Shown: positions 2,453 to 30,371 of the stretch, piece after piece | How positions within the stretch are numbered: position 1 is the first letter of the stretch | Layout: every line of letters starts with the position of its first letter | Virus record (IMG/VR): IMGVR_UViG_3300011113_000640 | Location: 1 to 64,000 of that record | Length of the DNA stretch: 64,000 bases | Direction: 5' to 3' (one strand) | The notes under the pieces: model-generated | The model's database searches: none | The model's input: the letters and a program-made list of their open reading frames with translations, nothing else | Told to the model about the DNA's origin: nothing | Program-made: the position numbers and the translations under genes

Positions 2453-2559
2453 GGTCGTTCCTTGTCAGGCCAGAATATCACGGCCGCGGCCACTGACACT
2501 GCTATCATCACCACAGTCCAGCCCAGCACTTCCAACGCATAGAACATAAAATCAAGCAT
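2449..2559 (-). CDS. 36-aa single-TM membrane peptide
   Basis: Hand translation [36 protein letters not shown]. Coupled by TGATG and ATGA overlaps to both neighbours. Confidence 0.6.
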   Translation of the reverse strand: MLDFMFYALEVLGWTVVMIAVSVAAAVIFWPDKERP

Positions 2560-3854
2560 CAGTGAAACTGTTCCTCTTCAGTGCTGCCCTTGAGTGCCTG
2601 TGTTGACGCTGTGGCTTCTATGGTGGTGGTCACACGGTCAAAATAGCTGGTTCCTACTTCTCTTTGGTGTTTGACTGCTTCAAAACCTCGCGCACCATCG
2701 GCAAATTCTTTTTGCTGTAGGTCCACAAATGCCGACATGCCATTCCTAGCATAGCCATGAGCCAGATCAAACATGCCGTGATTAAGAGCATGAAAGCCAG
2801 CGAGTGTAATGAATTGAAACTTGTAACCCATAGCTCCAAGTTCACGTTGGAAAACGCTGATTGTTGTATCATCTAAATTCTTCTTCCAGTTAAAAGATGG
2901 CGAGCAGTTGTAGGCCAACATCTTGTTAGGGAATTTGTCATGAATTGCATCGGCAAATTTCTTAGCAAAATCCAGATCTGGCGTGCCTGTCTCGCACCAG
3001 ATCAAATCTGCGTAAGGTGCATAGGCCAGGCCACGACTCACGGCCTGCTCAAAGCCGTTGCGTGTTTCATAGAAACCTTCCACTGTGCGCTCACCGGTCA
3101 GGAAAGGTCGGTCGTTTTCGTCCACGTCACTGGTGACCAATGCGGCTGCTTCGGCATCTGTGCGTGCCAATAATACTGTGGGCACACCCAGCACATCGGC
3201 AGCTAGTCGTGCAGCATTGAGTTTGTTGACAGCTTCGCGGGTGGGAATCAAGACCTTGCCGCCCATGTGACCGCACTTCTTGGCACTGGCCAACTGATCT
3301 TCAAAATGCACACCAGCTGCACCGGCTTCGATCATGGCCTTCATGAGTTCGTAGGCATTTAATACACCACCAAAGCCCGACTCGGCGTCGGCCACTATGG
3401 GCTGGAAAAAGTCCACATCTCCAGAACCTTCCATCCACTGGATCTGATCGGCACGTGCAAATGTGTTGTTGATTTTACGTACCATTTCAGGCACTGAATT
3501 CACGGCGTATAAACTTTGATCAGGATACATTTGTCCTGACGTGTTGGCATCAGCTGCCACTTGCCAACCACTTAGATAAATTCCTTTGAGTCCAGCCTTG
3601 ACCTGTTGCAATGCCTGCATGCCTGTTAGTGCGCCTAGGGTGTTAACATAATCTTCTTCCAACAAGCTCATCCATAGTTTGTTGGCACCACGTTCGGCCA
3701 AGCTGTATTCCACAGGATTGGATCCTTGCAAGTCCACTACCTGTTCGGCGGTGTAGTTGCGTTTGATGTGGTCCCAGCGTGGGTTGCTTTCCCATTCTTT
3801 TCTAATGTGTGTTGCTCGTGCTTTTTTGTTCAACGACATTTTGCTTCCTTTCAA
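2559..3854 (-). CDS. aceA: Isocitrate lyase
   Basis: Full-length 431 aa with [22 protein letters not shown], catalytic [25 protein letters not shown] and HQREVG. Confidence 0.97.
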
Positions 3855-5205: not shown

Positions 5206-5213
5206 TATAAATA
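5206..5213 (+). promoter_or_regulatory. T4-type late promoter TATAAATA
   Basis: Exact TATAAATA 5 nt before ATG 5219. The core TAAATA also precedes starts on the - strand at 2049-2054, 11791-11796, 14332-14337, 24826-24831, 32871-32876, 33791-33796, 41857-41862 and 44909-44914, and on the + strand at 11736-11741 and 60152-60157. Confidence 0.65.
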
Positions 5214-5218
5214 GCAAT

Positions 5219-6355
5219 ATGAACGTTCTTGTTTTAACTCCAGACCGTGTGGGCAGCAGCTTTTTACAACGATTGATAACCGTTTATATGACAGCGCACA
5301 AATATGATCGCCCAGTGATCAACATACACGAACTCACTGATCCTATGTTCATCAAATATCACAGCCCTGTATTCAATCAAGAAGTCATTGGGTGTTCCTT
5401 TAAACTAGGCAAACATAGATCATTGCCTGAAATTGTTGAACTATTAAAATCAACCGATCATTACAAAGTTTGTAGACTAACTCAGTTCTATTTGAAACAA
5501 CGCCAAGATTCAATAGCAGATCAGGTAGAGTTATATCACTATCTCAATGACAATTATTTTATTATCAGTGCTCGCAGAGATAACATGTTTGAGTACGGGC
5601 TGAGCTGGTGCATAGCCAAAGAATCTCATTTAATGAACGCTGCAAGTCATGAAGAAAAATTCAATTATTTTAAAAAATTATATCGTAATAAAATTACTGT
5701 AGATCCGCAAATGTTGTTGCATCACATTTATCAATATCAAGACTATATTAAATGGGTCGATGAATCATTTAAAGTTAATTCATATTTTCATTATGATCGA
5801 GACATGACTCGTATTGAGGATTACGTTCTAAACTTAAACATATTCAAAGATCAAGAAAAAAAGAAATCTTGGCAAGATATATTTGGTATCAATTTTACTG
5901 ACTGGAACAAATGTCATTATCTCATCAGCGATATGAGTGGCATTGGCCAACAGTTAGAAAAAAACTTTGATGTGCCAAAATTAACTTACGATAGTAATGA
6001 TACCGGTGTGCAATTACAGTGTGTTGAGCCCGATTATATACCACAGACTCTGACTCAGGAAGATCAACGCTTGTTGATTGAAAAAGGCCCGGCATACACT
6101 CAGGCCGCTGACGCTATACAAGAGCTGGTGGATCACAAAGTGCTGTATAAAGCTGTGCCAATTAAATTACAAACCATGATGGAAAAACGACTGTTGGTCA
6201 GTAACTTTGATGAGTGTCTTGAAGCTTATAATCGTGCTGTGGAAGATCCATTGTGTGGTCTGTATAATATGAGAAAAACTCTAGGCTTAGATGATATTTC
6301 TAAAATTTCAGAAGAAGAAATCAAACGCTGGCATAACTTGCCAAAATTAACCTAA
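5219..6355 (+). CDS. Sulfotransferase-like P-loop protein, paralog 1
   Basis: Start reset to MNVLVLTPDRVGSSFLQRL (5'-PSB-like loop). IISARRDNMFEYGLSW resembles the 3'-PB R...S motif. AT-rich. Confidence 0.6.
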   Translation: MNVLVLTPDRVGSSFLQRLITVYMTAHKYDRPVINIHELTDPMFIKYHSPVFNQEVIGCSFKLGKHRSLPEIVELLKSTDHYKVCRLTQFYLKQRQDSIADQVELYHYLNDNYFIISARRDNMFEYGLSWCIAKESHLMNAASHEEKFNYFKKLYRNKITVDPQMLLHHIYQYQDYIKWVDESFKVNSYFHYDRDMTRIEDYVLNLNIFKDQEKKKSWQDIFGINFTDWNKCHYLISDMSGIGQQLEKNFDVPKLTYDSNDTGVQLQCVEPDYIPQTLTQEDQRLLIEKGPAYTQAADAIQELVDHKVLYKAVPIKLQTMMEKRLLVSNFDECLEAYNRAVEDPLCGLYNMRKTLGLDDISKISEEEIKRWHNLPKLT

Positions 6356-6439
6356 CATCGTCTCCAGACATAGGCGTAACACCGGTAGATAAACAGCTTG
6401 ATTATATAACAGACATCTATTGCAAAAATAAGTAATGGC

Positions 6440-7729
6440 ATGAATGTTCTGATCCTGACTCCAGATGCGGTAGGCAGTACTCTTTTACAGCGGCTAATTA
6501 CCATTTACATGCAGTTCCATCACTATGATCGCCCCGTGATCAATCTGCACGAACTCACCAACGGCTTGGTCAAATATCATAATGAGCATTTTGGTCACGA
6601 AGTTTTGGGCAAGAAAACTGGCAAGTGGGGCTACTATCAAAGTTTGCAAGAAGTTGTTGAATTGCTGAGCAGTGTGGATCACTACAAGACCAGCAGGCTG
6701 GCACACTATCACATACGAAATCGTCAAGACAACCTGGCAGATCAGATACCATTTTATCAATACCTCAATGATAATTTTTACATTATTAGTTGTCGCCGAC
6801 ACAACATATTTGAACATGCACTGAGTTGGTGTCTCAGCAAGGTTACCAAAAAACTCAATGTGTATTCAGGCACAGAAAAAATCGACAATTTTTTTGACAT
6901 TTACCGCAACGGTATTGAACTGGACCCCAACAGCCTACTACAAACACTAAACGCCTACAAGGACTATGTGAAGTGGTGCAATGATCATTTTGATGTGGCC
7001 AATTATTTTTTCTACGAAGAACACTTGCCCAACATTGAAAAATACATTTTGAACCTACCAATTTTCGCACAACAACCTCAACAGTTGACCTGGCAGGACA
7101 ACTTTGGCATGCAATTTAACAAGTGGAACATGTGTCATTATGTCAGCAGCGATCTAGGAACCTTGGCCTTGGACAAACCAGAAACATTTGCACAGTTGGC
7201 TGATCAATCACGCACCTACAAATTAGGCGATGCAGATCACACACTAATCAAAGGATACAAGGATGTGCGTGATCCCAGCTGGCCAGAGGTCAATACTATG
7301 GAAGATTATGAAAGTTTACCTCAACATATCAAGGATGAAGTTGAACAAAAACATGGAATAAGTCTTGGCACCAACACCAGCCTGGTCAGCTACACAGCAT
7401 TACACAAACCTTTGATCGAACTATTGCCCAAGGAACATCAAGAATTCCTGCAGCAGAATCAAGAGACTTATGATCAAAGCATGAAAAATATTCATCAAAT
7501 GGTCACCAATGGAATCATAGTCAGTGATCCTCCAATCAAAAAACAAACCTTGGCAGAAAAAAAGCACATGATCAAAAACTATCAGCATCTGTTGACCGTT
7601 TACAATCAATGGATTGAACAAAATCCAGATCTAGGGCGTCCGTTAGACAATGACACCTTGGATCAGTTTGCTGATATGGAACGAGCTAGGTGGAATCCTG
7701 CTACTACAGCAATAACAGTATCTGATTGA
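6440..7729 (+). CDS. Sulfotransferase-like P-loop protein, paralog 2
   Basis: MNVLILTPDAVGSTLLQRL and IISCRRHNIFEHALSW. Clearly colinear with the upstream paralog. Confidence 0.6.
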   Translation: MNVLILTPDAVGSTLLQRLITIYMQFHHYDRPVINLHELTNGLVKYHNEHFGHEVLGKKTGKWGYYQSLQEVVELLSSVDHYKTSRLAHYHIRNRQDNLADQIPFYQYLNDNFYIISCRRHNIFEHALSWCLSKVTKKLNVYSGTEKIDNFFDIYRNGIELDPNSLLQTLNAYKDYVKWCNDHFDVANYFFYEEHLPNIEKYILNLPIFAQQPQQLTWQDNFGMQFNKWNMCHYVSSDLGTLALDKPETFAQLADQSRTYKLGDADHTLIKGYKDVRDPSWPEVNTMEDYESLPQHIKDEVEQKHGISLGTNTSLVSYTALHKPLIELLPKEHQEFLQQNQETYDQSMKNIHQMVTNGIIVSDPPIKKQTLAEKKHMIKNYQHLLTVYNQWIEQNPDLGRPLDNDTLDQFADMERARWNPATTAITVSD

Positions 7730-8561
7730 CCAGACTTTGACTAGTAAGGATGTCATAATGATGTCCATCACGGGCTAGATCTAACACTTTGATTTCTGGA
7801 ATCACTAGACCTTTCACTTTAGATTCCACAACACCTTTGAATGATTTAGGGACAAAATTTGGAATAAAAGTGTGTATGATTTTTGTATTGCAATCATTGG
7901 ACTCTAACACTTGATAGATATTGTGCAAGATGTTTTCGATGTCTTCTTCGTCAGTGCAGTTGCCTCCTCGCAACCTTCTCCATTCATCTTGCATACATGA
8001 ATCATTCCATCCGCCGTGTACAGAATCAATTTCATCTTGTATTTTTTGTGGTAATGTGTGGCGATTCTGTCTGGTGCAACTAGGCCAACTATCATCACGT
8101 ATGCTATTGTAAAAATTTTGCCAATGTTGATCCAATATCGTTTGCAGATTTTCTTCGCGACGATTCACATAACTCCACTGTATGATCATGAGCTTGGGTT
8201 GGATTTGTTTTAGGATATCTATAGATTTTCTGGATATCCAGTCGTTGCTGGCTCCATCCATGCTGACATTTACGGTTCTGGTGCCAATGGATTGTTGCAA
8301 AATATAGCTCCAGGTGTGTTCTCTAGGGCTTCCTAGACCCACAGTAAAACTGTCGCCTACACACCAAATGGCCTTGGATAGTTCTGACAGTGAGTCTGGC
8401 CAGCTTTGATCTCGATAGCCACGATTGTTGTAACGATATTCTACTTGATAGGGATAAGATCTATAGTGCTCACGATCCAGGCACTGATCTTCACAGTCAA
8501 TGCCAGTGGTAGACCAGCACTGGTCAACACGACTGGGTATTACAAAGTCAGGTAGGATCAT
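7704..8561 (-). CDS. SGNH/GDSL-like hydrolase or acyltransferase
   Basis: VGDSFTVG block I, NVSMDGASNDWI block II, and DGHH near the C-terminus. Confidence 0.65.
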   Translation of the reverse strand: MILPDFVIPSRVDQCWSTTGIDCEDQCLDREHYRSYPYQVEYRYNNRGYRDQSWPDSLSELSKAIWCVGDSFTVGLGSPREHTWSYILQQSIGTRTVNVSMDGASNDWISRKSIDILKQIQPKLMIIQWSYVNRREENLQTILDQHWQNFYNSIRDDSWPSCTRQNRHTLPQKIQDEIDSVHGGWNDSCMQDEWRRLRGGNCTDEEDIENILHNIYQVLESNDCNTKIIHTFIPNFVPKSFKGVVESKVKGLVIPEIKVLDLARDGHHYDILTSQSLVNQILLLL

Positions 8562-8608
8562 TTTTTATACGACTCAAGAAATCCACTTCATGTTCGTAGT
8601 TGTTGAGC

Positions 8609-9445
8609 CTATTCCAGGCCCATTTCGCGGCGGATTTTAGTTGCCGATATGCTGTGTGTAGCATCGTCAAAAGTTTCCTGTTCAATCTTATAACCCACAT
8701 CACGACCATAGGTGATATTAACTATGTTGGGCACTACCTGTATCTCATACTGTCCTTGAAACACAGGATCTAGATCTCTGCGAATATAGTTTTTAACTTG
8801 TTCTATGGCAAAGGGATTTGATCCTTGCCAACCCTGACAGTCGCGAATCATTATACAGACCTGTCCGGTCTTGGCTATGGCACGTTCAAACAAGGCCCTA
8901 TGGCCAGCATGCCAAGGTTGCCAACGTCCCAGCATCTGCACAGTTTCTTTCTGCCAATCAAATGTGGGTCTACGGCGCTTGTCAATGATGTGCGATCCCA
9001 CAAACTCAGCCCATTTTTCAGCATTTTGTTCTGTGATGCGGAAATCATACACTTCAGGTGGCACAAACATTTTGTTGGTGTCTTCAAAGCGACCGGCTTC
9101 GATGGTGTCCATCCATATGGTCCAGTCGGCCTTGAAGTTGTTGCGCATCTCTGGAATAGGCGCTACAAAATCGCAGATCACATAGTCCGTGCTGGTAGCC
9201 AAGGCAAACTCCAGCATCCTCAGACTTTGACGTATGCGTCCTTCTTTGCTGAAGTCCCAGTCGTTGTATTTTCTGCGCACATCATCGGCATTGAACCAGG
9301 TCACTGTGGCGTTGAGTCCACCAATGGGCATCATTTCAGGTATGTGTTGTGTGATGCCATGCTGTTCTAGATAGGTTTTTAATCTCTCTGCGAAGTAAGT
9401 CTTGCCCGAACCGGGCAAGCCCATGATCAATATTTTTTGTTTCAT
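8609..9445 (-). CDS. Adenylyl-sulfate (APS) kinase-like domain fused to HxGH nucleotidyltransferase
   Basis: GLPGSGKT, NADDVRRKYNDWDFSKEGRIRQ and ICDFVAP match CysC-like kinases. C-terminal LGRWQPWHAGH. Confidence 0.8.
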   Translation of the reverse strand: MKQKILIMGLPGSGKTYFAERLKTYLEQHGITQHIPEMMPIGGLNATVTWFNADDVRRKYNDWDFSKEGRIRQSLRMLEFALATSTDYVICDFVAPIPEMRNNFKADWTIWMDTIEAGRFEDTNKMFVPPEVYDFRITEQNAEKWAEFVGSHIIDKRRRPTFDWQKETVQMLGRWQPWHAGHRALFERAIAKTGQVCIMIRDCQGWQGSNPFAIEQVKNYIRRDLDPVFQGQYEIQVVPNIVNITYGRDVGYKIEQETFDDATHSISATKIRREMGLE

Positions 9446-10116
9446 AATAGTCCTTTTAGTTGGTAAGGTGATCGACTGCGTAACACACGCAAGAAATCTC
9501 TTGTGCGGTCTGTGGCCACTCCTGTGGCCTGTAGGGTAACTCGTGCGGTGTGTCCTGCGTTGGCTGTTGAGTGTGGCACATTGATCCAGTCAAAGGTCGT
9601 GACATCACCGGCCTGCCAGCCTTGATGAGTGTGATTGCCATAACTCCAGAAGTGGCCTGGTCGCCATTCTGTAAGCTGTATCATGTACCTATGTACCTGC
9701 GAAGGATCCTCAGGCATCCATTTTTCTAACTTGTCCAGGTGCAAGTTCCAAACCTGTCCTGGCAACTGCACATGTATGCGTGCCATGCTGTCGCTTAACC
9801 CAAATAGGTCGGCCAAGCGTTGTAAACCTACAGACAACTGCCAGTTGAGATTGGTTACTTCATAGTCTGCGCCATAGCCAAAGCGTTCCAGGTCATAGTC
9901 TTCTGCGACCAGTTCAGACTCAGGTCGTGCCTTGTTAGGGTTCCCACGAGTGCGCCAGGTGACACTTTTGCTGTTTTCTATGATTGTATCCAGCTGATCC
10001 GACCAAAATGGTCGTATATTACCACAGTAGGTCACTGTGTCAAAGAGCGGATCCATGCGTCTTGGATCAAAATGATATCTACTGCGTTTTCGTGTTTCGT
10101 CCCAACTGCTGTTCAT
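9442..10116 (-). CDS. Fe(II)/2-oxoglutarate dioxygenase-like (cupin) protein
   Basis: LHLD (HxD), PHSTANAG (distal His) and RVTLQATG (2OG-binding R). Confidence 0.65.
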   Translation of the reverse strand: MNSSWDETRKRSRYHFDPRRMDPLFDTVTYCGNIRPFWSDQLDTIIENSKSVTWRTRGNPNKARPESELVAEDYDLERFGYGADYEVTNLNWQLSVGLQRLADLFGLSDSMARIHVQLPGQVWNLHLDKLEKWMPEDPSQVHRYMIQLTEWRPGHFWSYGNHTHQGWQAGDVTTFDWINVPHSTANAGHTARVTLQATGVATDRTRDFLRVLRSRSPYQLKGLL

Positions 10117-10748
10117 AGTTTAATTCCCTGGAATACTCGCACATACACATCACTGTCTGGATAGTCTTGTTGATACTTAGCAGGCGGTGGCGCGATTCTT
10201 AGCGTGTCACATAGATGTCTGTTGTTTAGACACATGACTGTGGCTGACTTATTTAAGGCCTGGATCATGTCCCTATTTTGTTCTGTGATCCTGCGGTGCA
10301 TCCATGTTAAATCTCTATAGTATTCAGCATAGTCAGGATAGGTTATGCCAAAGTGGCCACATCTGACCCACCACCCCAAACAGGCATCCGTTGGGCGGTA
10401 AACGGTGACTACAGGGCAGTCGGGCCAGTGTGTTCTTAGGAAGTCTATGTGATGACAAAACACATGACTTTTTACAATGCGTATGCCAGTGCCCGAGAAT
10501 GGTCTATCAAATTCTGCTTCGCATTCTGATTTGGTTAGTTGGTCAAGACGATCAAAATCTTTGCCAAACTCCATGCCAGGATCATAATAAGCACCCAGGT
10601 GCATGAGTTCGCGGTGGCCCCAGGCCTCGTGATAATAGGTTCTGGCATCTGTGTAATCCGATCTATCGATATCAGAGCTATAGTACATGTTTTTGACCAC
10701 CGAGCTCCACTTGGAACCCGGGGCTCCGGCTACGAAAATATATTTCAA
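10113..10748 (-). CDS. Sulfotransferase-like P-loop protein
   Basis: IFVAGAPGSKWSSV N-terminal loop, IVKSH, and VYRP...W. Confidence 0.5.
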   Translation of the reverse strand: MKYIFVAGAPGSKWSSVVKNMYYSSDIDRSDYTDARTYYHEAWGHRELMHLGAYYDPGMEFGKDFDRLDQLTKSECEAEFDRPFSGTGIRIVKSHVFCHHIDFLRTHWPDCPVVTVYRPTDACLGWWVRCGHFGITYPDYAEYYRDLTWMHRRITEQNRDMIQALNKSATVMCLNNRHLCDTLRIAPPPAKYQQDYPDSDVYVRVFQGIKL

Positions 10749-11720
10749 TTATTTCTCTACTTTGATGTTTTTAGCTATGGGTGCAAAGGCTGTGCGTAGT
10801 TCTTCTGCATAGGCCATGACACCACGTGGGTTGAGTTCATCACGGTCTATGATTATATAGTTTTGTTCTGCCCAGTCTTGATATTCTTTGCTTAGTATTG
10901 CTTTAGAGAACTTGTCCACATACCAGTCCACAATGGTGTTTGGTGTCTGTGGTGGCAACACAACTACCCAGCCAGCATAAACTTTGAGTCCTGGAATAGT
11001 GTCACTGAGCAGGGGCACCGTAGGTAATGCTTTTAGTTTAGGTCCACCTGTGAGTCCTATAGTTTTGACTTTGCCTGATTCTATGAGAGGCCGGGCAATG
11101 GCTATGGGCATGATGCCAAATTCAGTGCCGGTTTTGCCGTCGTAGCTGGCCACTGATGTCACTGCCGGCAATGGCCCATTAAAAGCCACGTGTTGTATGA
11201 GCTTGGGATCAGCCTTGGTCTTGGCCATGATGTACTCATAGGCCATACGGTGTGCACCGCCACCCACAGCAATGTTCACAGTTTTACCATTGGTTATGTA
11301 TTTTACAAATTCTTGTGGTGTGTTTACTGCGCTTTTACTTGAGGCTACCAGGACCAGGGGACTCTTGCCCAGGGTTATCACAGGCTTGAAACTGTTGTAT
11401 TCAAACCGCTTGATGTCCTTCTGCCAGATATCGTTTGTGACAAACAGACTCATGTGGCTGGGCACCATTAAATGTAGTCCGTCGCTGGATGCGTTCATGA
11501 ATGCGTTTGATGCCACAGCAGCATCAGCACCAGGTCGTGTTTCAACAGTAAAGGCCACACCTGGGTTTTGATTGGCGACTATTTCGCTGGCTTTGCGAAA
11601 ACTGATTTCATTGCCACTGCCAGGAGCAAATCCAATGGTCGCGTTTACAGGTTTGTTAGGGGCCCATTGCGCCCAGGCCAAAGCAGGCACGACCAATAAG
11701 GTCAGTAATAATTTTTTCAT
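10749..11720 (-). CDS. tctC: Tripartite tricarboxylate transporter substrate-binding protein (TctC/Bug family)
   Basis: Signal peptide, IGFAPGSGNE, VETRPGA, VLASSKS..TPQEF, HVAFNGPLPA, LKALPTVP, GWVVVLPPQTP. Confidence 0.85.
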   Translation of the reverse strand: MKKLLLTLLVVPALAWAQWAPNKPVNATIGFAPGSGNEISFRKASEIVANQNPGVAFTVETRPGADAAVASNAFMNASSDGLHLMVPSHMSLFVTNDIWQKDIKRFEYNSFKPVITLGKSPLVLVASSKSAVNTPQEFVKYITNGKTVNIAVGGGAHRMAYEYIMAKTKADPKLIQHVAFNGPLPAVTSVASYDGKTGTEFGIMPIAIARPLIESGKVKTIGLTGGPKLKALPTVPLLSDTIPGLKVYAGWVVVLPPQTPNTIVDWYVDKFSKAILSKEYQDWAEQNYIIIDRDELNPRGVMAYAEELRTAFAPIAKNIKVEK

Positions 11721-11762
11721 AAAAGTTCCTTTGTGTAAATAGTTATAGAAAATTACAGACAC

Positions 11763-11778
11763 AGCAAAAATTTTTGCT
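11763..11778. promoter_or_regulatory. Perfect 16-bp palindrome AGCAAAAATTTTTGCT between divergent TAAATA motifs
   Basis: Seen directly, between + TAAATA 11736-11741 and - TAAATA 11791-11796. Confidence 0.5.
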
Positions 11779-11816
11779 TTCTTGTAAAATTATTTATCAC
11801 TTCTGGAAAAATCTTA

Positions 11817-12557
11817 ATGAATACTAAAATTTTTGCACTAATCAAGAAAAATTTGGACATGACTTTTGCCTTGCCCAAATACAGCTCTGTGCGCGATAGC
11901 ATTGGCGCCGATACTGTGGTAGAAGACCTGCCCTGGACTCCGGCACGCTATAGAAAGTTCAAAGATGCTGTGGAAGCCGAACTGGGCTTGCCCTGCGAAT
12001 ACCGTGGCACCCTGCGAGATATCATTGCTGATCTCAGTGAACGTTACACCAAGCGTTTTTTTGCTGAGATATGGAAGCCTAGGACTGGTGAATATGATCA
12101 CTCAGGCTGGGCCTTGGCCGAAGAAATCGCCAAACAAGATCCTCGAAATGTCTTAGATGTGGGGTGTGGATATCACCCATTCCGAGGTCGCATACCCAAT
12201 TTGACCGGCATTGATCCCTACAATAACTGCGCAGATTATGAAGTGGACATCTTGGACTATAAAGTCCGACCCGGCACACATGATCACATCATTGCCTTGG
12301 GATCAATCAATTTCAACAGCAAGGATGAGATTGAACAGCGTTTTGCTCACTGTGTAGAACTGTTGGCGCCCGGAGGCAAATTCTATCTGCGTGCCAACCC
12401 TGGACTGCCACATAAAACCGGACCTTATGTGGATATCTTTCCTTGGACCTTTGAAACGGTCAACGAGTTTGCTGAATGCTACAATCTAAAACTGCTGGAA
12501 TTCAAACGTGAACCGGCTGAGTTGGGTCGATTATTTTTTGTTTATCAAAAACTTTGA
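11817..12557 (+). CDS. Class I SAM-dependent methyltransferase with N-terminal ACP-like helical domain
   Basis: VLDVGCG, TGIDPY, IIALGSINF, LLAPGGKFYLR. Confidence 0.8.
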   Translation: MNTKIFALIKKNLDMTFALPKYSSVRDSIGADTVVEDLPWTPARYRKFKDAVEAELGLPCEYRGTLRDIIADLSERYTKRFFAEIWKPRTGEYDHSGWALAEEIAKQDPRNVLDVGCGYHPFRGRIPNLTGIDPYNNCADYEVDILDYKVRPGTHDHIIALGSINFNSKDEIEQRFAHCVELLAPGGKFYLRANPGLPHKTGPYVDIFPWTFETVNEFAECYNLKLLEFKREPAELGRLFFVYQKL

Positions 12558-13182
12558 TCATGTAGTCAGCGGCTGACTTGTGTGCTTCTTCCAATGGGTG
12601 CCAAGCTTCACTGATTGGGTAATTGTTTTTACGACTCCATGACAAAAAACCCAGACCTTCAAAAGTTGTCATATGCTTTGACACAGCATTTTGTAATTCT
12701 TTAACAGCCGAACTTGCATGCCAGCGTTGATCAAATATCAAATCATCCTCGTAGGTCATGATGAATTTTGTGCCTTTTTCCAACAAAATATCAATCACGG
12801 TTTTTACACTGATCAACGTGGTCAACTTGTCTCTGTATTCTGAGTGTAAGTTTTTGTAATATGACTCGGCGTATTTTTCAGTTGAGCTGGGTCGCAAGGT
12901 ACCCCAAGGTTGCCATATGTCCTTGGACTTGATAAAATCAAAACGATCTATCCAGGTCCAATCAATTATGTATACTGCTGAATCGTTTTTGTTGCATTCA
13001 TCGAGAACTCGTTCGGCTATTTGTAGATTTCCGCTTCCCGGTCTGGCATGGCATTCATAATCATACCCTAATCGGTTAGCCAACACAGCAGGCCAAGTCA
13101 ATTCACTGTATTTCCATATGTGTGGGTCGTCACTGAGCTCACTGCCATATATGAAACTGCAACCAAAACTTTTTATTTTCAT
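12502..13182 (-). CDS. SGNH/GDSL-like protein
   Basis: FGCSFIYG, ARPGSGNLQI, WHPLEEAH. Confidence 0.65.
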   Translation of the reverse strand: MKIKSFGCSFIYGSELSDDPHIWKYSELTWPAVLANRLGYDYECHARPGSGNLQIAERVLDECNKNDSAVYIIDWTWIDRFDFIKSKDIWQPWGTLRPSSTEKYAESYYKNLHSEYRDKLTTLISVKTVIDILLEKGTKFIMTYEDDLIFDQRWHASSAVKELQNAVSKHMTTFEGLGFLSWSRKNNYPISEAWHPLEEAHKSAADYMIKVFDKQKIIDPTQPVHV

Positions 13183-13212: not shown

Positions 13213-13779
13213 CTAAATTATTCCTGCTGCTGACTGAATGGCTTGGAGTGTTCTATCCCGTTTGTCGTAGGTTGCGACCACAGGTAAGCCTGCCGCTAAA
13301 CGCACTTCGTTGAGATCCTTCTCGTAACGGTCGCGATAGGCTCGGGGACTCAAGGGCACTGTGCTATCAAAGGTGTCACGACTAAATGGAATCTCTTTGT
13401 CTCGGTAGTGCATGGTCCATGCCGACGAATCTTCCCATTCTGTGAGTGTGTTGAGATCATCCAGCAACTGTTCAACGTTGCCGCCGGCTGTACTTCTACG
13501 TCGTATTTCCACATATACCAAGTAGCGTCCAGGTTTGATTTCACCTGGACTGCGATCTGCATCCAGCACAAAGTCATAGCCCTTTTCAAACCAGCTCATA
13601 AGATCCTTGGCGGCCTGCGGATCTCTCACAAAAAAACTGATCACGATGATGTCATCATCGTCGCCCATTTTGCTAGAGAACTCGTCCACATGTATAGTGG
13701 GCTTCATCATGCCTTCGAGGTCTTTGAAGCCAAGACTTTCAGAAAGCTGGAGCGGCGGGTTGGAGTGTTTGTTGTGCAT
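13213..13779 (-). CDS. Hypothetical phage protein
   Basis: Long ORF in operon context. The start at MHNKH is uncertain. Confidence 0.65.
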   Translation of the reverse strand: MHNKHSNPPLQLSESLGFKDLEGMMKPTIHVDEFSSKMGDDDDIIVISFFVRDPQAAKDLMSWFEKGYDFVLDADRSPGEIKPGRYLVYVEIRRRSTAGGNVEQLLDDLNTLTEWEDSSAWTMHYRDKEIPFSRDTFDSTVPLSPRAYRDRYEKDLNEVRLAAGLPVVATYDKRDRTLQAIQSAAGII

Positions 13780-14326
13780 TTTGGGCTTGTTGTTCATTCT
13801 GATAACTTTCTTGATCAAGATCCTGCTCGTAGGCATCGTCTAGATCGGCTAAATCGATTTCCTCATCTTCCAGTTCCACTGAACCTGTGCGTATGTCTGT
13901 CATAAGAGCTTTGGGCATGGTGATCTGTACCAGCCAGATTTTCTTTTCTATGAGACGAGCTTTTTTGGTACCTGGACGATAATCCGATGGATCTTCGATT
14001 TTCATGGGCACCTTCATGGCAGTTTTTTTGTATTTGACTTCGCAGTCAAACGGCAACAGTCTACGGGCGCCACGTGGGTCGGGCATGAGCTTTTCGGGCC
14101 ACATGAATATGCAGGTCACACGATATTTGCCGATGTTGGGCCCACTTACAAGTTCGCCAATTTGCCAGTTTTTGAAAGCATATAGATCCAGCTCATCCAG
14201 CACACGCTCAAAGTCCAACAGCGTGAGCAAGCTGCCTTCGCTCATGTAGATGTCGCGGATGTTTTCTGCCACCTGCCAGTAGTCTTCACCGTCGCGGAAT
14301 ATGGCTTGATCAATGGTTTTGCTCAT
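13739..14326 (-). CDS. Hypothetical phage protein with acidic tail
   Basis: 195-aa ORF preceded by TAAATA. Confidence 0.7.
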   Translation of the reverse strand: MSKTIDQAIFRDGEDYWQVAENIRDIYMSEGSLLTLLDFERVLDELDLYAFKNWQIGELVSGPNIGKYRVTCIFMWPEKLMPDPRGARRLLPFDCEVKYKKTAMKVPMKIEDPSDYRPGTKKARLIEKKIWLVQITMPKALMTDIRTGSVELEDEEIDLADLDDAYEQDLDQESYQNEQQAQNAQQTLQPAAPAF

Positions 14327-14503: not shown

Positions 14504-15241
14504 TTGAGTAGAAATCGCGCAAGCAAAGCACAAAAGCGTATGAAACAAGTCGAGAACACCATCCAGTTTAACCAAGCCACACCCAAGCAGTACCGTCCAC
14601 GCACTATTGATCTGGTTCCTAGAACCCGTAATCAAGAGCGCCTGGTTTTGGCCTTGCAGGATAGTTCTCAGCACATTGTTGTCACAGTTGGCCCCGCCGG
14701 CACAGGTAAAACTTACTTGGCCATGCAGGCTGCTGTACGAGCCCTACAAGAAGGAACCACAGAACGCATAGTAATGACACGACCTGCAGTGGGAGTAGAA
14801 GATGAACGGCACGGATTCCTGCCGGGCAATCTTGTGGCAAAAATGGAACCATGGACTCGCCCTTTACTGGACGTATTACGCGAGAGTTACCGCCCTCAAG
14901 ACATTAGTGCGATGATTGAGGATCAGGTCATAGAAATAGCCCCCTTGGCATTCATGCGGGGTCGAACGTTCAAGCGGTCGTGGATCATTGCAGATGAAAT
15001 GCAGAATGCCACACCGGCCCAGTGTAAAATGTTGATGACCCGCATAGGTGTGGACTCAAAAATCGTTATCACGGGTGACATTGAACAAGCCGATCGCAGT
15101 CACGGCGACAATGGTCTCATGGACCTGAGTCAACGACTGGGGAAAGGGGGTGTTGAAGGAATTGCTGTGTGCGAGTTACAAGCTCGCGATGTACAGCGAC
15201 ATGCCATTATTGGCAGTGTATTGAAACTTTATTCTGATTGA
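14504..15241 (+). CDS. phoH: PhoH family ATPase
   Basis: GPAGTGKT, TRPAV, GFLPG, FMRGRTF, IIADEMQN, TGDIEQAD, DVQRH. TTG start. Confidence 0.95.
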   Translation: MSRNRASKAQKRMKQVENTIQFNQATPKQYRPRTIDLVPRTRNQERLVLALQDSSQHIVVTVGPAGTGKTYLAMQAAVRALQEGTTERIVMTRPAVGVEDERHGFLPGNLVAKMEPWTRPLLDVLRESYRPQDISAMIEDQVIEIAPLAFMRGRTFKRSWIIADEMQNATPAQCKMLMTRIGVDSKIVITGDIEQADRSHGDNGLMDLSQRLGKGGVEGIAVCELQARDVQRHAIIGSVLKLYSD

Positions 15242-17499: not shown

Positions 17500-17500
17500 G

Positions 17501-17785
17501 CTAGGAAGTTTTGTTGATATCTTCTTTGGATAGTTCGTGTCCGTTTTCCTGGAACAAGCGTTCAATGGTGGTTGCATAGTGTTTGTAATAGTAGCTGACA
17601 ATGGTATCCCAATCTTTGGTGGCACTAAGTCCGGCCACGCTACACAACAACACCCGCTGTTCCTTAAAATCCAGGATAACATTGGTCATTTGCCAATCTT
17701 TGCGCCTGAGTCTTTTCGAGATAGTCATGACTTCATCAATCTTGCCCGAAGGTTTAGTGTAGTAGGTTAATAACAGATATCTCAT
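17501..17785 (-). CDS. Hypothetical protein
   Basis: 94-aa ORF packed between its neighbours. Confidence 0.65.
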   Translation of the reverse strand: MRYLLLTYYTKPSGKIDEVMTISKRLRRKDWQMTNVILDFKEQRVLLCSVAGLSATKDWDTIVSYYYKHYATTIERLFQENGHELSKEDINKTS

Positions 17786-25292: not shown

Positions 25293-25304
25293 ATTTGTTC
25301 CTGA

Positions 25305-25505
25305 TTAGTTTCTGATTTTCCAAGCAGAGTATGCTTGTATAATTTCATGCTCAGCAAAATTGGTTGTTCCACTGCGAATGTATTCTAGCAACGGCAAATT
25401 AGGTATAACTTTTGTTAAAATATCAGCATTGTCTCTTAGTAGTCTAAACAGGCGATCCTGATCTTGTTTACTTAAATTCATTACATTTTGATCTAGTGTG
25501 TTCAC
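25305..25505 (-). CDS. 66-aa hypothetical protein, part of insert
   Basis: ATGA overlap with the upstream gene. Confidence 0.6.
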   Translation of the reverse strand: MNTLDQNVMNLSKQDQDRLFRLLRDNADILTKVIPNLPLLEYIRSGTTNFAEHEIIQAYSAWKIRN

Positions 25506-27609: not shown

Positions 27610-27619
27610 AATTATTGAT

Positions 27620-30370: not shown

Positions 30371-30371
30371 T

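What the first reader, a model, noticed from the sequence alone, without database searches (positions are those of the whole stretch)
5219..13182. Putative sulfation/tailoring gene cluster: three sulfotransferase-like genes, PAPS-supply fusion, dioxygenase, methyltransferase, two SGNH genes and TctC
Seen: nine consecutive genes under TAAATA late motifs whose motifs point to sulfo-transfer, APS phosphorylation, hydroxylation, methylation, acyl transfer and solute binding. Established: sulfotransferases need PAPS made by ATP sulfurylase plus APS kinase. Inference: this is a self-contained pathway that sulfates and tailors a virion glycan, host surface or small molecule. It could serve receptor masking, superinfection exclusion or virion shielding. 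I cannot name a described equivalent.
Basis: partly seen in the sequence, partly recalled or inferred. Interest (0 to 1): 0.72.

Follow-up and report, generated by a model that had tools for sequence, protein, structure and literature searches.

The report
Phage sulfation-type tailoring gene module
An uncultured freshwater jumbo phage carries a conserved set of enzymes (three sulfotransferase-shaped proteins, an APS-kinase fusion, a hydroxylase, a methyltransferase, two esterase-like proteins and a secreted solute-binding protein) that looks like a kit for chemically decorating a still-unknown target; no phage system of this make-up has been tested in the laboratory.

Summary
The nine genes are real. 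They sit between the lysis genes and virion genes of a 320 kb freshwater jumbo phage, whose host is probably a Burkholderiales bacterium.

**Confirmed**
- ST1/ST2 and ST3 belong to two unrelated protein families. In unbiased fold searches both match sulfotransferases best, ahead of P-loop kinases.
- The N-terminal half of the fusion protein is a true APS-kinase homologue.
- The other genes are a 2OG/Fe hydroxylase (Asp/Asn-hydroxylase-like), a class I methyltransferase, two SGNH-type proteins and a signal-peptide TctC.
- The genes co-occur in relatives as two sub-modules: TctC-ST3-(hydroxylase)-methyltransferase with the kinase fusion usually nearby, and ST1/2-SGNH1.

**Not confirmed**
- Only two TAAATA motifs lie upstream of cluster genes, not nine.
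- The second half of the "PAPS-supply fusion" is a roughly 110-residue NMNAT-like nucleotidyltransferase, not a recognisable ATP sulfurylase. The genome has no ATP sulfurylase of either known type.
- No sulfotransferase-like protein reaches a curated family threshold.
- The substrate is unknown.

**Closest description**
Iyer et al. 2010 predicted bacterial operons combining hydroxylase, sulfotransferase, methyltransferase and PAPS synthetase that would modify proteins. The cluster is therefore not without a described analogue.

**Verdict:** partly supported; a new variant of a known kind; moderate interest.

The parts
5206..5213 (+). TATAAATA motif ending 5 nt before the ST1 start codon
   Evidence: It is one of only two TAAATA sites upstream of cluster genes.
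5219..6355 (+). ST1, a 378-aa sulfotransferase-fold paralogue of ST2. Its P-loop has the motif R-V-G-S-S, and it lacks the 35-aa insert module.
   Evidence: 51% identical to ST2 over residues 1-244. P-loop and R..S motifs. No Pfam or NCBIfam hit.
6440..7729 (+). ST2, a 429-aa protein of sulfotransferase fold, best matching the Stf0/NodH type, with C-terminal helices.
   Evidence: AlphaFold2 model, pLDDT 88.7. Foldseek top hits are Stf0 and NodH. In the unbiased VIA search the top ten of 48,161 chains are all sulfotransferases, Z 8.3-9.5, with 186-215 residues aligned. At least 1734 metagenomic homologues, none with a Pfam domain.
7247..7357 (+). Insert module of about 37 aa in ST2 (pattern Y..V.D.SWP.I....Y..LP..I..EVE..H), shared with SGNH1.
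   Evidence: An HMM of the module finds SGNH1 at E 3.9e-8 among 1650 ORFs of the genome. The module is present or absent among ST2 homologues.
7704..8561 (-). SGNH1, a 285-aa SGNH/GDSL-type hydrolase or acyltransferase with conserved GDS, G-x-S-N and D-x-x-H blocks. It converges on ST2 with a 26-nt overlap.
   Evidence: Lipase_GDSL_2, E 1.6e-4, below the curated cut-off. Catalytic blocks conserved in 52 sequences. Found within the fetched flank, usually adjacent to the ST1/2-like gene, in 69 of 81 loci.
8013..8111 (-). Copy of the shared insert module inside SGNH1 (residues about 151-183).
8981..9445 (-). N-terminal APS-kinase-family domain of the fusion protein (residues about 1-155). It has a Walker A motif G-L-P-G-S-G-K-T and an APS-kinase-type D..V-R...N-D-W-D-F-S-x-E-G-R and F-V-A-P motif.
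   Evidence: Pfam APS_kinase 27.1 bits against a cut-off of 21.1. In the family profile search against the PDB, the top 19 hits are all APS kinases, E 1.3e-13 to 7e-7.
8612..8953 (-). C-terminal mini nucleotidyltransferase domain (residues about 165-278) with G-R-W-Q-P-W-H-A-G-H and I-S-A-T-K-I-R motifs. It is NMNAT-like, not ATP-sulfurylase-like.
   Evidence: NCBIfam NMNAT models, E 5e-6 to 5e-5. PDB hits NadM 9e-7 and MJ0541 1.2e-5. PF01747 is absent from the genome. The two domains are separate genes in some relatives.
9442..10116 (-). Oxygenase, 224 aa, 2OG/Fe(II) type, Asp/Asn beta-hydroxylase-like. Its stop overlaps the kinase-fusion start by 4 nt.
   Evidence: H126, D128, H182 and R192 are invariant in 19 sequences. 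4 of 19 members hit Asp_Arg_Hydrox and others hit 2OG-FeII_Oxy_3 or PhyH. Atlas score 0.96 to clusters carrying Asp_Arg_Hydrox.
10113..10748 (-). ST3, 211 aa, a divergent Sulfotransfer_3-like protein of sulfotransferase fold, unrelated in sequence to ST1/ST2. Its stop overlaps the oxygenase start by 4 nt.
   Evidence: Model pLDDT 78.8. In the unbiased VIA search the top six are all sulfotransferases: TPST1 Z 10.8, tick TPST 10.5, TPST2 10.2, Stf1 9.3, Stf9 9.1, OLS-ST 9.1. 18 of 22 family members hit PF13469, best E 3.9e-5. Atlas result.
10749..11720 (-). TctC-family periplasmic solute-binding protein with an N-terminal signal peptide (MKKLLLTLLVVPALAWA). It abuts ST3. The ORF stays open up to a GTG at 11762.
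   Evidence: Pfam TctC 57.6 bits, E 1.8e-15. Signal peptide read from the sequence. No TctA in the phage.
11791..11796 (-). TAAATA motif upstream of the TctC-ST3-oxygenase-kinase fusion-SGNH1 minus-strand unit.
11817..12557 (+). MT, 246 aa, class I SAM-dependent methyltransferase (motif I V-L-D-V-G-C-G), divergent from the TctC operon and very conserved.
   Evidence: Weak Methyltransf_23 and _25 hits. Motifs invariant in 20 sequences. 51-89% identity across relatives.
12502..13182 (-). SGNH2, 226 aa, a DUF6071/GDSL-like protein (G-C-S block I, G-x-G-N, H-P-L-E-x-A-H). It has a paralogue at 33794-34486.
13739..14326 (-). Adjacent virion structural protein. Its acidic C-terminal tail carries a tyrosine in the motif D-L-D-x-A-Y-E-x-D that is kept in every relative examined. 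This is a speculative candidate substrate, not shown to belong to the module.
   Evidence: phrog_12928. Homologue of a PA5oct/Atu_ph07 virion protein. Tail motif conserved in all 23 distinct relatives' tails.

Best explanation
This is a conserved accessory 'tailoring' module of a clade of uncultured freshwater jumbo myoviruses; the host is probably a Burkholderiales bacterium. It has two sub-modules.

**Sub-module A.** A tightly packed minus-strand operon (secreted TctC binding protein, ST3, 2OG/Fe hydroxylase, APS-kinase/nucleotidyltransferase fusion, then SGNH1), a divergent methyltransferase and SGNH2.

**Sub-module B.** The ST1/ST2 sulfotransferase-fold paralogues with SGNH1. ST2 and SGNH1 share a 35-residue insert.

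**Most likely mechanism.**
- The kinase domain turns APS into PAPS. The APS comes either from the host's CysDN or, possibly, from the fused mini nucleotidyltransferase.
- The three sulfotransferase-fold proteins use PAPS to O-sulfate a common target.
- The hydroxylase makes some of the acceptor hydroxyl groups.
- The methyltransferase and the SGNH enzymes add or remove methyl and acyl groups.
- The target is unknown. A phage or host-envelope protein or peptide, or a glycan, fits best.

**Shown.** Gene order, the folds of ST2 and ST3, APS-kinase homology, conserved catalytic residues and co-occurrence in relatives.

**Inferred.** PAPS synthesis, sulfate transfer, the order of steps, the target and the role of TctC.
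For: **Folds and families**
- In unbiased fold searches the top ten matches for ST2 are all sulfotransferases.
- The top six matches for ST3 are all sulfotransferases.
- 18 of 22 ST3-family members hit Sulfotransfer_3.
- The R-x-N-x-F-E-x-A-x-S motif, which resembles the 3'-phosphate-binding motif, is conserved across the ST1/2 family.
- The kinase domain matches only APS kinases at the top of the PDB list, 1.3e-13, and passes the Pfam cut-off.
- The hydroxylase triad and the 2OG-binding arginine are invariant.
- The SGNH and methyltransferase catalytic motifs are conserved.

**Operon and co-occurrence**
- The TctC, ST3, oxygenase and kinase-fusion genes abut or overlap by 4 nt.
- The whole cluster is syntenic in about 27-38 of 81 related loci, and an SGNH1 homologue accompanies the ST1/2-like gene in 69 of 81.
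- In genomes where the pair has moved 80-270 kb away, TctC, ST3 and MT still sit together. The kinase fusion is beside them in two of three and is still present in the third.
- The kinase, alone or fused, lies directly beside the ST2-like and SGNH1 genes in divergent loci.

**Host context**
- Canonical APS kinase was found in only 125 of 301 sampled Burkholderiales genomes, so many candidate hosts may not make PAPS.

**Literature**
- Operons combining beta-hydroxylase, sulfotransferase, methyltransferase and PAPS synthetase have been predicted to hydroxylate and then sulfate proteins (PMC2938197).
Against: - No ST protein of the window reaches any curated sulfotransferase threshold.
- The fold margin over P-loop kinases is small (Z about 9.5-10.8 against 8.2-8.8).
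- The basic residue of the 5'-phosphosulfate loop is not conserved in the ST1/2 family: it is R, A or G, and ST2 has A. ST3 lacks the serine of the 3'-phosphate motif.
- The phage has no recognisable ATP sulfurylase, and the fused second domain is NMNAT-like.
- The same fusion occurs in Sanovirus siphophages, next to NADAR, MazG and DNA-methylase genes, where no ST1/2- or ST3-like gene was detected.
- The synteny comes largely from one phage clade, so the co-occurrence is not phylogenetically independent.
- TctC, the oxygenase and SGNH2 show mosaic identities, and TctC or the oxygenase went undetected in the fetched flank of some relatives.
- No substrate gene is identified.
Confidence: 0.5

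Rival explanations
1. The region is a mosaic island of independent auxiliary genes lodged between the lysis and structural modules, not one pathway. On this reading TctC, like the nearby isocitrate lyase, boosts carboxylate uptake and metabolism. The kinase fusion serves nucleotide or cofactor metabolism, as it may in Sanoviruses. The ST-like, SGNH, oxygenase and MT genes each act on different targets.
For: - An isocitrate lyase and PhoH flank the cluster.
- The ST1/2-SGNH1 pair and the TctC-ST3-MT set separate by 80-270 kb in G006, G007 and G008.
- Identity is mosaic. TctC is 85% identical in a phage whose ST2-like protein is 41% identical, and 41% identical in the closest relative.
- The kinase fusion occurs in Sanoviruses where no ST1/2- or ST3-like gene was detected.
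- In a distant relative the pair sits among unrelated tailoring enzymes.
Against: - The 4-nt overlaps and abutting genes of TctC, ST3, oxygenase and kinase fusion argue for co-expression.
- TctC, ST3 and MT stay together in every relocated copy examined.
- An APS-kinase homologue next to sulfotransferase-fold genes is the one pairing with an obvious biochemical logic.
- ST2 and SGNH1 share a specific insert module.
Confidence: 0.25
2. The module is an NAD-type or other cofactor salvage route rather than sulfation. TctC brings in a nicotinate-, nicotinamide- or riboside-like compound. The NMNAT-like domain adenylylates it. The P-loop proteins (the kinase domain, and ST3 as a nicotinamide-riboside-kinase-like enzyme) phosphorylate intermediates. 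The purpose could be to counter NAD-depleting host defences.
For: - The C-terminal domain carries the archaeal NMNAT signature G-R-x-Q-P-x-H-x-G-H and I-S-x-T-x-I-R, and its best matches are NMNAT.
- Foldseek hits 2-4 for ST3 are human nicotinamide riboside kinase.
- Sanovirus homologues sit beside a NADAR-domain gene.
- From general knowledge, not tested here: some TctC-family proteins bind nicotinate or nicotinamide.
Against: - The kinase domain matches APS kinases specifically, with PSTK next and no NadR or NRK kinases.
- ST3's best structural and profile matches are sulfotransferases, and its P-loop is not a canonical Walker A.
- The genome has no Nampt/NAPRTase.
- The NT domain has only about 110 residues, so it lacks much of an NMNAT.
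- This reading gives no role to ST1/2, the SGNH proteins, the hydroxylase or the methyltransferase.
Confidence: 0.1
3. The fusion makes a non-sulfate 3'-phospho-adenylyl donor. The mini nucleotidyltransferase adenylylates a small anion or metabolite, and the APS-kinase-like domain adds the 3'-phosphate, as in CoA and PAPS synthesis. The sulfotransferase-fold proteins transfer that other group.
For: - The domain logic, adenylyl transfer followed by 3'-phosphorylation, matches both PAPS and CoA synthesis (inference).
- The ST1/2 family keeps the 3'-phosphate-type R..S motif but not the basic residue that contacts the sulfate.
- The NT domain is not an ATP sulfurylase.
- The ST1/2 family is closed, with no bridge to cellular sulfotransferases: only 166 representatives among 1.84 billion.
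Against: There is no precedent for sulfotransferase-fold enzymes using another PAP-linked donor. The motifs of APS kinases that align here are kept, which favours APS itself. This reading is pure inference.
Confidence: 0.1

Closest known systems
Predicted bacterial operons of beta-hydroxylase, sulfotransferase, methyltransferase, PAPS synthetase and acetyltransferase for hydroxylating and then sulfating collagen-like or tail-collar proteins (Iyer, Abhiman, de Souza, Aravind 2010, PMC2938197)
   Same: An Asp/Asn-hydroxylase-family 2OG oxygenase lies next to a sulfotransferase, together with a methyltransferase, a PAPS-synthesis-type gene and acyl-handling enzymes. There is a link to phage tail or virion proteins and to Burkholderiales (the paper's example is Acidovorax).
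   Different: - That system is itself only predicted.
- Here the methyltransferase is not fused to a PhyH oxygenase.
- The acyl enzymes are SGNH-type, not GNAT-type.
- The PAPS gene is an APS-kinase/NMNAT-like fusion.
- A secreted TctC protein is part of the set.
- No collagen-like or tail-collar gene lies in the cluster. Glycine-rich proteins lie about 12 kb away.
Rhizobial Nod-factor decoration genes (NodH sulfotransferase with NodPQ for PAPS, NodS methyltransferase, NodL acetyltransferase, NodU carbamoyltransferase); from general knowledge
   Same: A dedicated PAPS supply accompanies a NodH/Stf0-type sulfotransferase. NodH is the top AlphaFold-DB match of ST2. Methyl and acyl tailoring enzymes are also present. 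A distant relative also has a carbamoyltransferase nearby.
   Different: There is no glycosyltransferase or chitin-oligomer synthase in the cluster. NodPQ is a CysD/CysN-CysC type, absent here. The setting here is a phage, and the substrate is unknown.
Metazoan PAPS synthase (PAPSS1/2) and bacterial Sat-CysC fusions
   Same: The N-terminal APS-kinase domain is fused to a C-terminal nucleotidyltransferase-superfamily domain, in the same order as PAPSS. The PAPSS kinase domains are among the best PDB matches.
   Different: The C-terminal domain has about 110 residues, is NMNAT-like and does not match the ATP-sulfurylase family. The kinase region after the aligned core looks shorter than in canonical APS kinases. 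That comparison is from memory and was not tested.
Tyrosylprotein sulfotransferases (TPST1/2; bacterial RaxST with RaxPQ)
   Same: ST3's best structural matches are TPSTs, Z 10.2-10.8. From general knowledge, RaxST also works with dedicated PAPS-synthesis genes.
   Different: There is no detectable sequence similarity to TPST or RaxST. The P-loop reads G-A-P-G-S-K-W-S-S rather than P-R-S-G-T-T. No substrate peptide is identified.
PHROG 10255 'kinase' of Sanovirus phages (Xylella phages Sano and Salvo, Stenotrophomonas phage Bhz60)
   Same: The same two-domain architecture, 34-40% identity over the full length.
   Different: There it sits among NADAR, MazG and DNA-methylase genes, and no ST1/2- or ST3-like gene was detected in those phages. 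Its function is untested.

Membership tests
PAPS-dependent sulfotransferase (ST1/ST2 family) | Sulfotransferase fold (P-loop alpha/beta core plus C-terminal helices) | tested here: met
   The top ten of 48,161 chains are all sulfotransferases, Z 8.3-9.5, with 186-215 residues aligned across model residues 1 to about 400. Kinases align over only about 130-157 residues. Stf0 and NodH are the top Foldseek hits.
PAPS-dependent sulfotransferase (ST1/ST2 family) | 5'-phosphosulfate-binding loop with a basic residue (P-K/R-x-G-S/T-T) | tested here: inconclusive
   The G-S-T part is conserved. The basic residue is present in ST1 and about half of the close family (R-V-G-S-S/T), but it is A in ST2 and G in remote members.
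PAPS-dependent sulfotransferase (ST1/ST2 family) | 3'-phosphate-binding motif (strand, then R ... S) | tested here: met
   R-x-N-x-F-E-x-A-x-S is conserved family-wide, and R120 and S129 are invariant. The correspondence to the structural motif is inferred from position, not from a residue-level superposition.
PAPS-dependent sulfotransferase (ST1/ST2 family) | Significant match to a curated sulfotransferase profile | tested here: not met
   No hit for the window proteins. 2 of 29 remote members hit PF13469 at E 0.0015. The profile search against the PDB was negative.
PAPS-dependent sulfotransferase (ST3 family) | Sulfotransferase fold | tested here: met
   In the unbiased search the top six are all sulfotransferases, Z 9.1-10.8. 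The next matches are P-loop transferases and kinases at Z 8.8 or below.
PAPS-dependent sulfotransferase (ST3 family) | Match to a curated sulfotransferase profile | tested here: inconclusive
   The window protein has no hit. 18 of 22 homologues hit PF13469, best E 3.9e-5, and this is the only recurrent family. The Atlas neighbours carry Sulfotransfer_3 and Sulfotransfer_1.
PAPS-dependent sulfotransferase (ST3 family) | PAPS-binding loops (basic residue in the 5' loop; R and S in the 3' motif) | tested here: inconclusive
   G-A-P-G-S-K-W-S-S, with an invariant lysine shifted by two positions. R118-P-x-D121 is conserved, but glycine stands where the serine is expected.
Any sulfotransferase (all three proteins) | PAPS binding and sulfate transfer | not testable with these tools
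APS kinase (CysC/PAPSS kinase domain) | Homology to characterised APS kinases, including the Walker A and the substrate-region motifs | tested here: met
   Pfam 27.1 bits against a cut-off of 21.1. In the profile search against the PDB, the first 19 hits are APS kinases at 1.3e-13 to 7e-7. The alignment covers G-L-P-G-S-G-K-T, D..V-R..N.D..F-S.E.R and F-V-(A/S)-P...R.
APS kinase (CysC/PAPSS kinase domain) | Full-length kinase domain including the lid region, and APS phosphorylation activity | not testable with these tools
   Only profile positions 5-88 align to solved APS kinases. Activity is untested.
ATP sulfurylase (Sat or CysD type) | Match to PF01747 or PF01507, and the Q-x-R-N-P-x-H-x-x-H sulfate/ATP motif | tested here: not met
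   The genome has no PF01747 or PF01507 match. The C-terminal domain has G-R-W-Q-P-W-H-A-G-H, the NMNAT form. Only a -1.7 bit alignment to the H-x-x-H region of 2gks was found.
NMNAT / cytidylyltransferase-like nucleotidyltransferase | H-x-G-H and I-S-x-T-x-x-R motifs; profile match | tested here: inconclusive
   Both motifs are present and conserved. PDB NMNAT hits at 9e-7 to 4e-3. Pfam CTP_transf_like scores 18.2 bits, below the cut-off of 21. The domain has only about 110 residues, against 168-181 for the solved archaeal NMNAT chains matched.
TctC (tripartite tricarboxylate transporter binding protein) | Family profile above the curated cut-off; export signal; partner TctA/TctB | tested here: met
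   PF03401 scores 57.6 bits against a cut-off of 27. The signal peptide was read from the sequence. The phage encodes no TctA, so it would be an orphan binding protein that depends on the host's membrane parts. The ligand is unknown.
2OG/Fe(II) oxygenase, Asp/Asn beta-hydroxylase-like | H-x-D...H iron triad and a basic 2OG-binding residue; family profile | tested here: inconclusive
   H126, D128, H182 and R192 are invariant. Profile hits are only weak and only in relatives: Asp_Arg_Hydrox in 4 of 19 members at 0.0022, also 2OG-FeII_Oxy_3 and PhyH. Atlas score 0.96. The protein was not folded.
SGNH/GDSL hydrolase | Blocks I (G-D-S), III (G-x-N-D) and V (D-x-x-H); family profile | tested here: inconclusive
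   SGNH1 has all three blocks conserved in 52 sequences, but Pfam scores 22.6 bits against a cut-off of 32.9. SGNH2 has G-C-S, G-x-G-N and H-P-L-E-x-A-H, with DUF6071/GDSL neighbours.
Hydroxylase-sulfotransferase protein-modification operons of Iyer et al. 2010 | A co-encoded collagen-like, glycine-rich or tail-collar substrate protein | tested here: not met
   There is no such gene inside 5219-13182 and no Collar domain in the genome. Glycine-rich proteins lie at 24846-26437, beside the tail-fibre genes.

The most novel reading that the evidence does not exclude
The APS-kinase/mini-nucleotidyltransferase fusion is a minimal, phage-type PAPS synthase. Its roughly 110-residue NMNAT-like domain would be a new kind of sulfate adenylyltransferase, unrelated to Sat and CysD.

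It would feed two previously unrecognised sulfotransferase families. These would sulfate hydroxylated or tyrosine residues of the phage's own virion proteins. One candidate site is the tyrosine, kept in every relative examined, in the acidic D-L-D-x-A-Y-E-x-D tail of the neighbouring structural protein.

If so, this would be the first sulfated phage particle that I know of.
Probability: 0.1. Interest if true: 0.8.

Novelty: new variant of a known kind. Interest (0 to 1): 0.55.

Why it matters
If the module really sulfates a target, it would be a phage-borne sulfation pathway. I know of no such pathway that has been tested experimentally.

- **Abundance.** The protein families involved are very common in lake and river metagenomes. 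Searches found at least 1734 ST2-like, 3897 ST3-like and 8000 kinase-fusion proteins. All were unannotated or auto-named.
- **New family definitions.** The work would define two new sulfotransferase families. It might also define a minimal PAPS synthase.
- **Older prediction.** It would give an experimental handle on the 2010 prediction that bacteria and phages hydroxylate and then sulfate structural proteins.
- **Orphan binding protein.** A phage-encoded secreted TctC protein that always travels with these enzymes is unusual in itself. It suggests that phages can plug their own binding proteins into host transporters.

If the genes turn out to be unrelated auxiliaries, the practical value is limited to better annotation of a large group of jumbo phages.

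Tried and rejected
**Searches that found nothing**
- Nucleotide and protein searches of cultured-phage records. There was no DNA match for the region, no ST2 homologue, only two marine single-cell virus records for ST3 and one cyanophage 2OG oxygenase for the hydroxylase.
- Profile-profile comparison of the ST3 family with the ST1/2 family showed no relationship. They are treated as two independent families.
- Profile searches of the ST1/2, ST3 and oxygenase families against PDB sequences found no meaningful hit. The methyltransferase gave only a weak generic hit.
- Exhaustive representative search with the ST1/2 N-terminal domain, hoping to bridge to cellular sulfotransferases. It returned only 166 proteins, all of the same closed family.

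**Ideas checked and dropped**
- The Sanovirus 'cysteine dioxygenase' is not related to the cluster's oxygenase.
- A third protein, at genome position 164147-165442, that fitted the insert-module pattern by regular expression was not significant with the HMM, E 1.3.
- The idea that Burkholderiales hosts generally lack APS kinase is only partly true: 125 of 301 sampled genomes have one, as do 3 of 5 isolates.

**No verdict or weak evidence**
- Complex prediction of ST3 with the acidic tail of the neighbouring virion protein gave no verdict, so it counts neither for nor against binding.
- Metatranscriptome runs contain only fragments of relatives (mostly under 90% identity), mainly on the kinase fusion and the methyltransferase. 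DNA carry-over cannot be excluded, so this is not counted as proof of transcription.

**Not done**
- The kinase fusion, oxygenase, methyltransferase, SGNH proteins and TctC were not folded, because only two structure jobs were allowed.

**Note on unpublished data**
- The tally includes one unpublished genome (G304). No claim here depends on it.

Full report
**Setting.** The window is the first 64 kb of a 320.5 kb virus record rated 93% complete.
- No cultured phage shares the region's DNA.
- The DnaE-type polymerase is closest to an uncultured 484 kb phage.
- A neighbouring virion protein is homologous to structural proteins of PA5oct, Atu_ph07 and Rak2-type jumbo myoviruses.
- Near-identical DNA occurs in lake, river and freshwater viral metagenomes.
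- A phage isocitrate lyase at 2559-3854 is 73-80% identical to the isocitrate lyases of Rubrivivax, Aquabacterium and Burkholderiaceae genomes. The host is therefore probably a freshwater member of the Burkholderiales (inference).

**The observation.** Nine long ORFs fill 5219-13182, but they are not one co-directional run.
- ST1 (5219-6355) and ST2 (6440-7729) are on the plus strand and converge on SGNH1.
- On the minus strand, TctC (10749-11720), ST3 (10113-10748), the oxygenase (9442-10116) and the kinase fusion (8609-9445) abut or overlap by 4 nt. SGNH1 (7704-8561) follows after 47 nt.
- The methyltransferase (11817-12557, plus strand) diverges from TctC, and SGNH2 (12502-13182, minus strand) converges on it.
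- The flanks are a GH19 endolysin and a membrane protein on one side and two virion structural proteins on the other.

**TAAATA motif.** TAAATA is not over-represented in the window: 23 sites against 28 expected. Only two sites precede cluster genes, at 5208 before ST1 and at 11791 before the TctC operon. Nine sites lie within 45 nt upstream of a same-strand start against about 0.6 expected, several at 22-29 nt. Two more, at 5208 and 14332, also sit just before a start codon. The motif may be a genuine upstream element, but 'nine genes under late motifs' is not correct.

**The sulfotransferase-like proteins.** ST1 and ST2 are paralogues, 51% identical over the first 244 residues. ST3 is unrelated to them in sequence. 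None has a significant Pfam, NCBIfam or PHROG annotation.

*ST2.*
- The model is confident, pLDDT 88.7.
- Foldseek puts Stf0 trehalose sulfotransferase and NodH first.
- In a search that aligns the model to 48,161 representative chains without Foldseek, the first ten are all sulfotransferases. They score Z 8.3-9.5 with 186-215 aligned residues that reach into the C-terminal helices.
- P-loop kinases align over only about 130-157 residues, at Z 8.2 or below.

*The ST1/2 family.*
- It keeps an R-x-N-x-F-E-x-A-x-S motif at the position where sulfotransferases bind the 3'-phosphate of PAPS.
- It also keeps a G-S-T P-loop. The basic residue before that loop varies: R in ST1 and many members, A in ST2, G in remote members.
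- The family is large but closed. There are at least 1734 members at 90% clustering but only 166 representatives among 1.84 billion. Two remote members weakly hit Sulfotransfer_3.

*ST3.*
- The model has pLDDT 78.8.
- Its first six matches are sulfotransferases: tyrosylprotein sulfotransferases at Z 10.2-10.8, then Stf1, Stf9 and the olefin-synthase sulfotransferase domain.
- 18 of 22 homologues hit Sulfotransfer_3, best E 3.9e-5, and no other family recurs.
- The language-model neighbours are viral clusters carrying sulfotransferase families.

Both families therefore have the sulfotransferase fold, and ST3 also has weak profile support. Cofactor binding and activity remain untested.

**The 'PAPS-supply fusion'.**
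- *Kinase domain.* A profile was built from the window protein, jumbo-phage relatives, a Sanovirus homologue and the stand-alone kinase of Ralstonia phage RsoM2USA. Against all solved structures it finds APS kinases in its first 19 places, 1.3e-13 to 7e-7. These include the kinase domains of human PAPS synthases and bacterial Sat-CysC and CysNC fusions. The alignments cover the Walker A loop and the D..V-R..N.D..F-S.E.R and F-V-(A/S)-P...R segments. Pfam APS_kinase is above its cut-off.
- *Nucleotidyltransferase domain.* The C-terminal domain of about 110 residues carries G-R-W-Q-P-W-H-A-G-H and I-S-A-T-K-I-R. It matches NMN adenylyltransferases such as NadM and MJ0541, not ATP sulfurylase. 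The whole genome has no PF01747 or PF01507 match.
- *Domain separation.* The two domains are separate genes in some relatives.
- *Distribution.* No sampled Burkholderiales genome has the fused architecture, 0 of 301 (that tally contains one unpublished genome, G304, which is not needed for this statement). The protein is very conserved and abundant: at least 8000 hits, and the 120 best are 85-95% identical.
- *Counter-observation.* The fusion also occurs in Sanovirus siphophages next to NADAR, MazG and DNA-methylase genes, where no ST1/2- or ST3-like gene was detected.

'APS kinase' is therefore well supported. 'ATP sulfurylase plus APS kinase' is not. Whether the mini domain adenylylates sulfate is an open and interesting possibility.

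**The other genes.**
- *Oxygenase.* It has invariant H126, D128, H182 and R192. Relatives weakly hit Asp/Asn beta-hydroxylase, 2OG-FeII_Oxy_3 and PhyH, and the Atlas search agrees.
- *SGNH1.* It keeps the G-D-S, G-x-S-N and D-x-x-H blocks in 52 sequences.
- *SGNH2.* It is a DUF6071/GDSL-like protein with a paralogue at 33794-34486 next to the tail-fibre genes.
- *Methyltransferase.* It has a classical V-L-D-V-G-C-G motif and is highly conserved.
- *TctC.* It is a clear family member with a signal peptide. The phage has no TctA, so it would have to work with host membrane components.

**Co-occurrence.**
- Eighty viral contigs and one metagenome contig encode an ST1/2-like protein. An SGNH1 homologue accompanies it in 69 of these 81 loci. 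The rest of the cluster is present in about 27-38 of them.
- ST2 and SGNH1 share an insert of about 35 residues (Y..V.D.SWP.I....Y..LP..I..EVE..H). The module's HMM finds SGNH1 at E 3.9e-8 among the genome's 1650 ORFs. The insert is present or absent among ST2 homologues. This suggests a common partner or substrate (inference).
- In three nearly complete or large relatives the ST1/2-SGNH1 pair has moved 80-270 kb away, but the other genes persist. TctC, ST3 and the methyltransferase are together in all three, the kinase fusion is beside them in two, and the oxygenase in two.
- In divergent loci the kinase, alone or fused, sits directly beside the ST2-like and SGNH1 genes.
- Identities are mosaic. 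TctC is 85% identical in a phage whose ST2-like protein is 41% identical, and 41% identical in the closest relative. Cassettes are therefore exchanged.
- All this supports functional coupling. The genomes belong to one broad clade, however, so the evidence is not phylogenetically independent.
- In one distant relative the pair lies among seven 2OG oxygenases, a tryptophan halogenase, a luciferase-like monooxygenase and a carbamoyltransferase. This is the kind of phage tailoring cluster discussed by Iyer et al..

**Mechanism.** The best reading is a sulfation-centred tailoring module.
- The kinase domain makes PAPS from APS.
- The three sulfotransferase-fold proteins transfer sulfate.
- The hydroxylase creates acceptor hydroxyl groups.
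- The methyltransferase and the SGNH enzymes add or trim other groups.
- A rationale for carrying the kinase is that canonical APS kinase was found in only 125 of 301 sampled Burkholderiales genomes, so many possible hosts may not make PAPS.
- The target is unknown. All the enzymes lack signal peptides, so they act in the cytoplasm, and only TctC is exported.
- One candidate is the adjacent virion protein. Its acidic tail carries a tyrosine in D-L-D-x-A-Y-E-x-D that is kept in all 23 distinct relatives' tails. Other candidates are the glycine-rich proteins near the tail fibres. These are leads only. A complex prediction gave no verdict.
- I put about 0.5 on this reading, 0.25 on a mosaic of unrelated auxiliary genes, and about 0.1 each on an NAD-type salvage reading and on a non-sulfate PAP-linked donor.

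**Comparison and novelty.**
- The closest described system is the operon type predicted by Iyer et al. 2010 (PMC2938197). It combines beta-hydroxylase, sulfotransferase, methyltransferase and PAPS synthetase, and acts on collagen-like or tail-collar proteins.
- Nod-factor decoration (NodH with NodPQ), the domain order of PAPSS, and TPST/RaxST are further partial analogues.
- The differences here are two unannotated sulfotransferase-fold families, the APS-kinase/NMNAT-like fusion, an integral secreted TctC, SGNH rather than GNAT acyl enzymes, and a jumbo-phage setting without an identified substrate gene.
- I class it as a new variant of a known kind, with moderate interest.

Noticed in passing
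window 2559-3854 (-): Phage-encoded isocitrate lyase (Pfam ICL, E 5.7e-106), 73-80% identical to the isocitrate lyases of Rubrivivax, Aquabacterium and Burkholderiaceae genomes. It is an auxiliary glyoxylate-shunt gene and the best clue to the host.
   Followed up: partly
window 7247-7357 (+) and 8013-8111 (-): ST2 and the adjacent SGNH1 share an insert module of about 35 residues (SWP...LP..I..E...H) that is otherwise absent from the genome. Some ST2 homologues, and ST1, lack it.
   Followed up: yes
window 13739-14326 (-), C-terminal 50 residues: A virion structural protein has an acidic tail. One tyrosine in D-L-D-x-A-Y-E-x-D is kept in all 23 distinct relatives' tails and resembles a tyrosine-sulfation context. 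A second tyrosine is variable.
   Followed up: partly
window 24846-25292 (-) and 25502-26437 (-): Two glycine-rich proteins, one of them 41% glycine with scattered tyrosines, lie just upstream of the tail-fibre-like genes at 26437-32849. They have no Pfam match.
   Followed up: no
window 33794-34486 (-): A paralogue of SGNH2 (36% identity, E 3e-39) with a canonical G-D-S block, about 1 kb from the tail-fibre genes at 30372-32849.
   Followed up: partly
window 16582-17682 (-) and 17782-18984 (-): Two radical SAM proteins, one with a SPASM domain, lie beside a clamp-loader gene. Their role is unknown and no link to the cluster was established.
   Followed up: no
window-wide, e.g. 22545, 24826, 32871, 60152: TAAATA, often preceded by G or T, lies 22-29 nt upstream of several start codons. 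Nine sites are within 45 nt of a same-strand start against about 0.6 expected. It is possibly a phage promoter element.
   Followed up: partly
L173, L005/L006 and other related loci: TctC, the oxygenase and SGNH2 have mosaic identities that do not follow phage relatedness: TctC falls into groups at 85%, about 52% and about 38% identity. This suggests cassette exchange and possibly different ligands.
   Followed up: partly
L007/L012 (NT only); L066, L077, L051, L047/L048 and L089 (kinase only): The kinase and nucleotidyltransferase halves of the fusion occur as separate genes in some relatives, and the kinase half alone in Ralstonia phage RsoM2USA.
   Followed up: partly
own genome 138415-139242 (-) and 260070-260543 (-), outside the window: Two further cytidylyltransferase-like genes. 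One is fused to a mannose-6-phosphate-isomerase/cupin domain. The other is a 157-aa protein whose homologue sits directly upstream of the kinase fusion in relative G006.
   Followed up: no
L086 (280 kb relative), about 6.9-20.3 kb of the locus: The ST1/2-like and SGNH1-like pair is embedded among seven 2OG oxygenases, a tryptophan halogenase, a luciferase-like monooxygenase and a carbamoyltransferase.
   Followed up: no
window 14504-15241 (+): A PhoH-like ATPase (Pfam E 5.2e-68), a common phage auxiliary gene.
   Followed up: no
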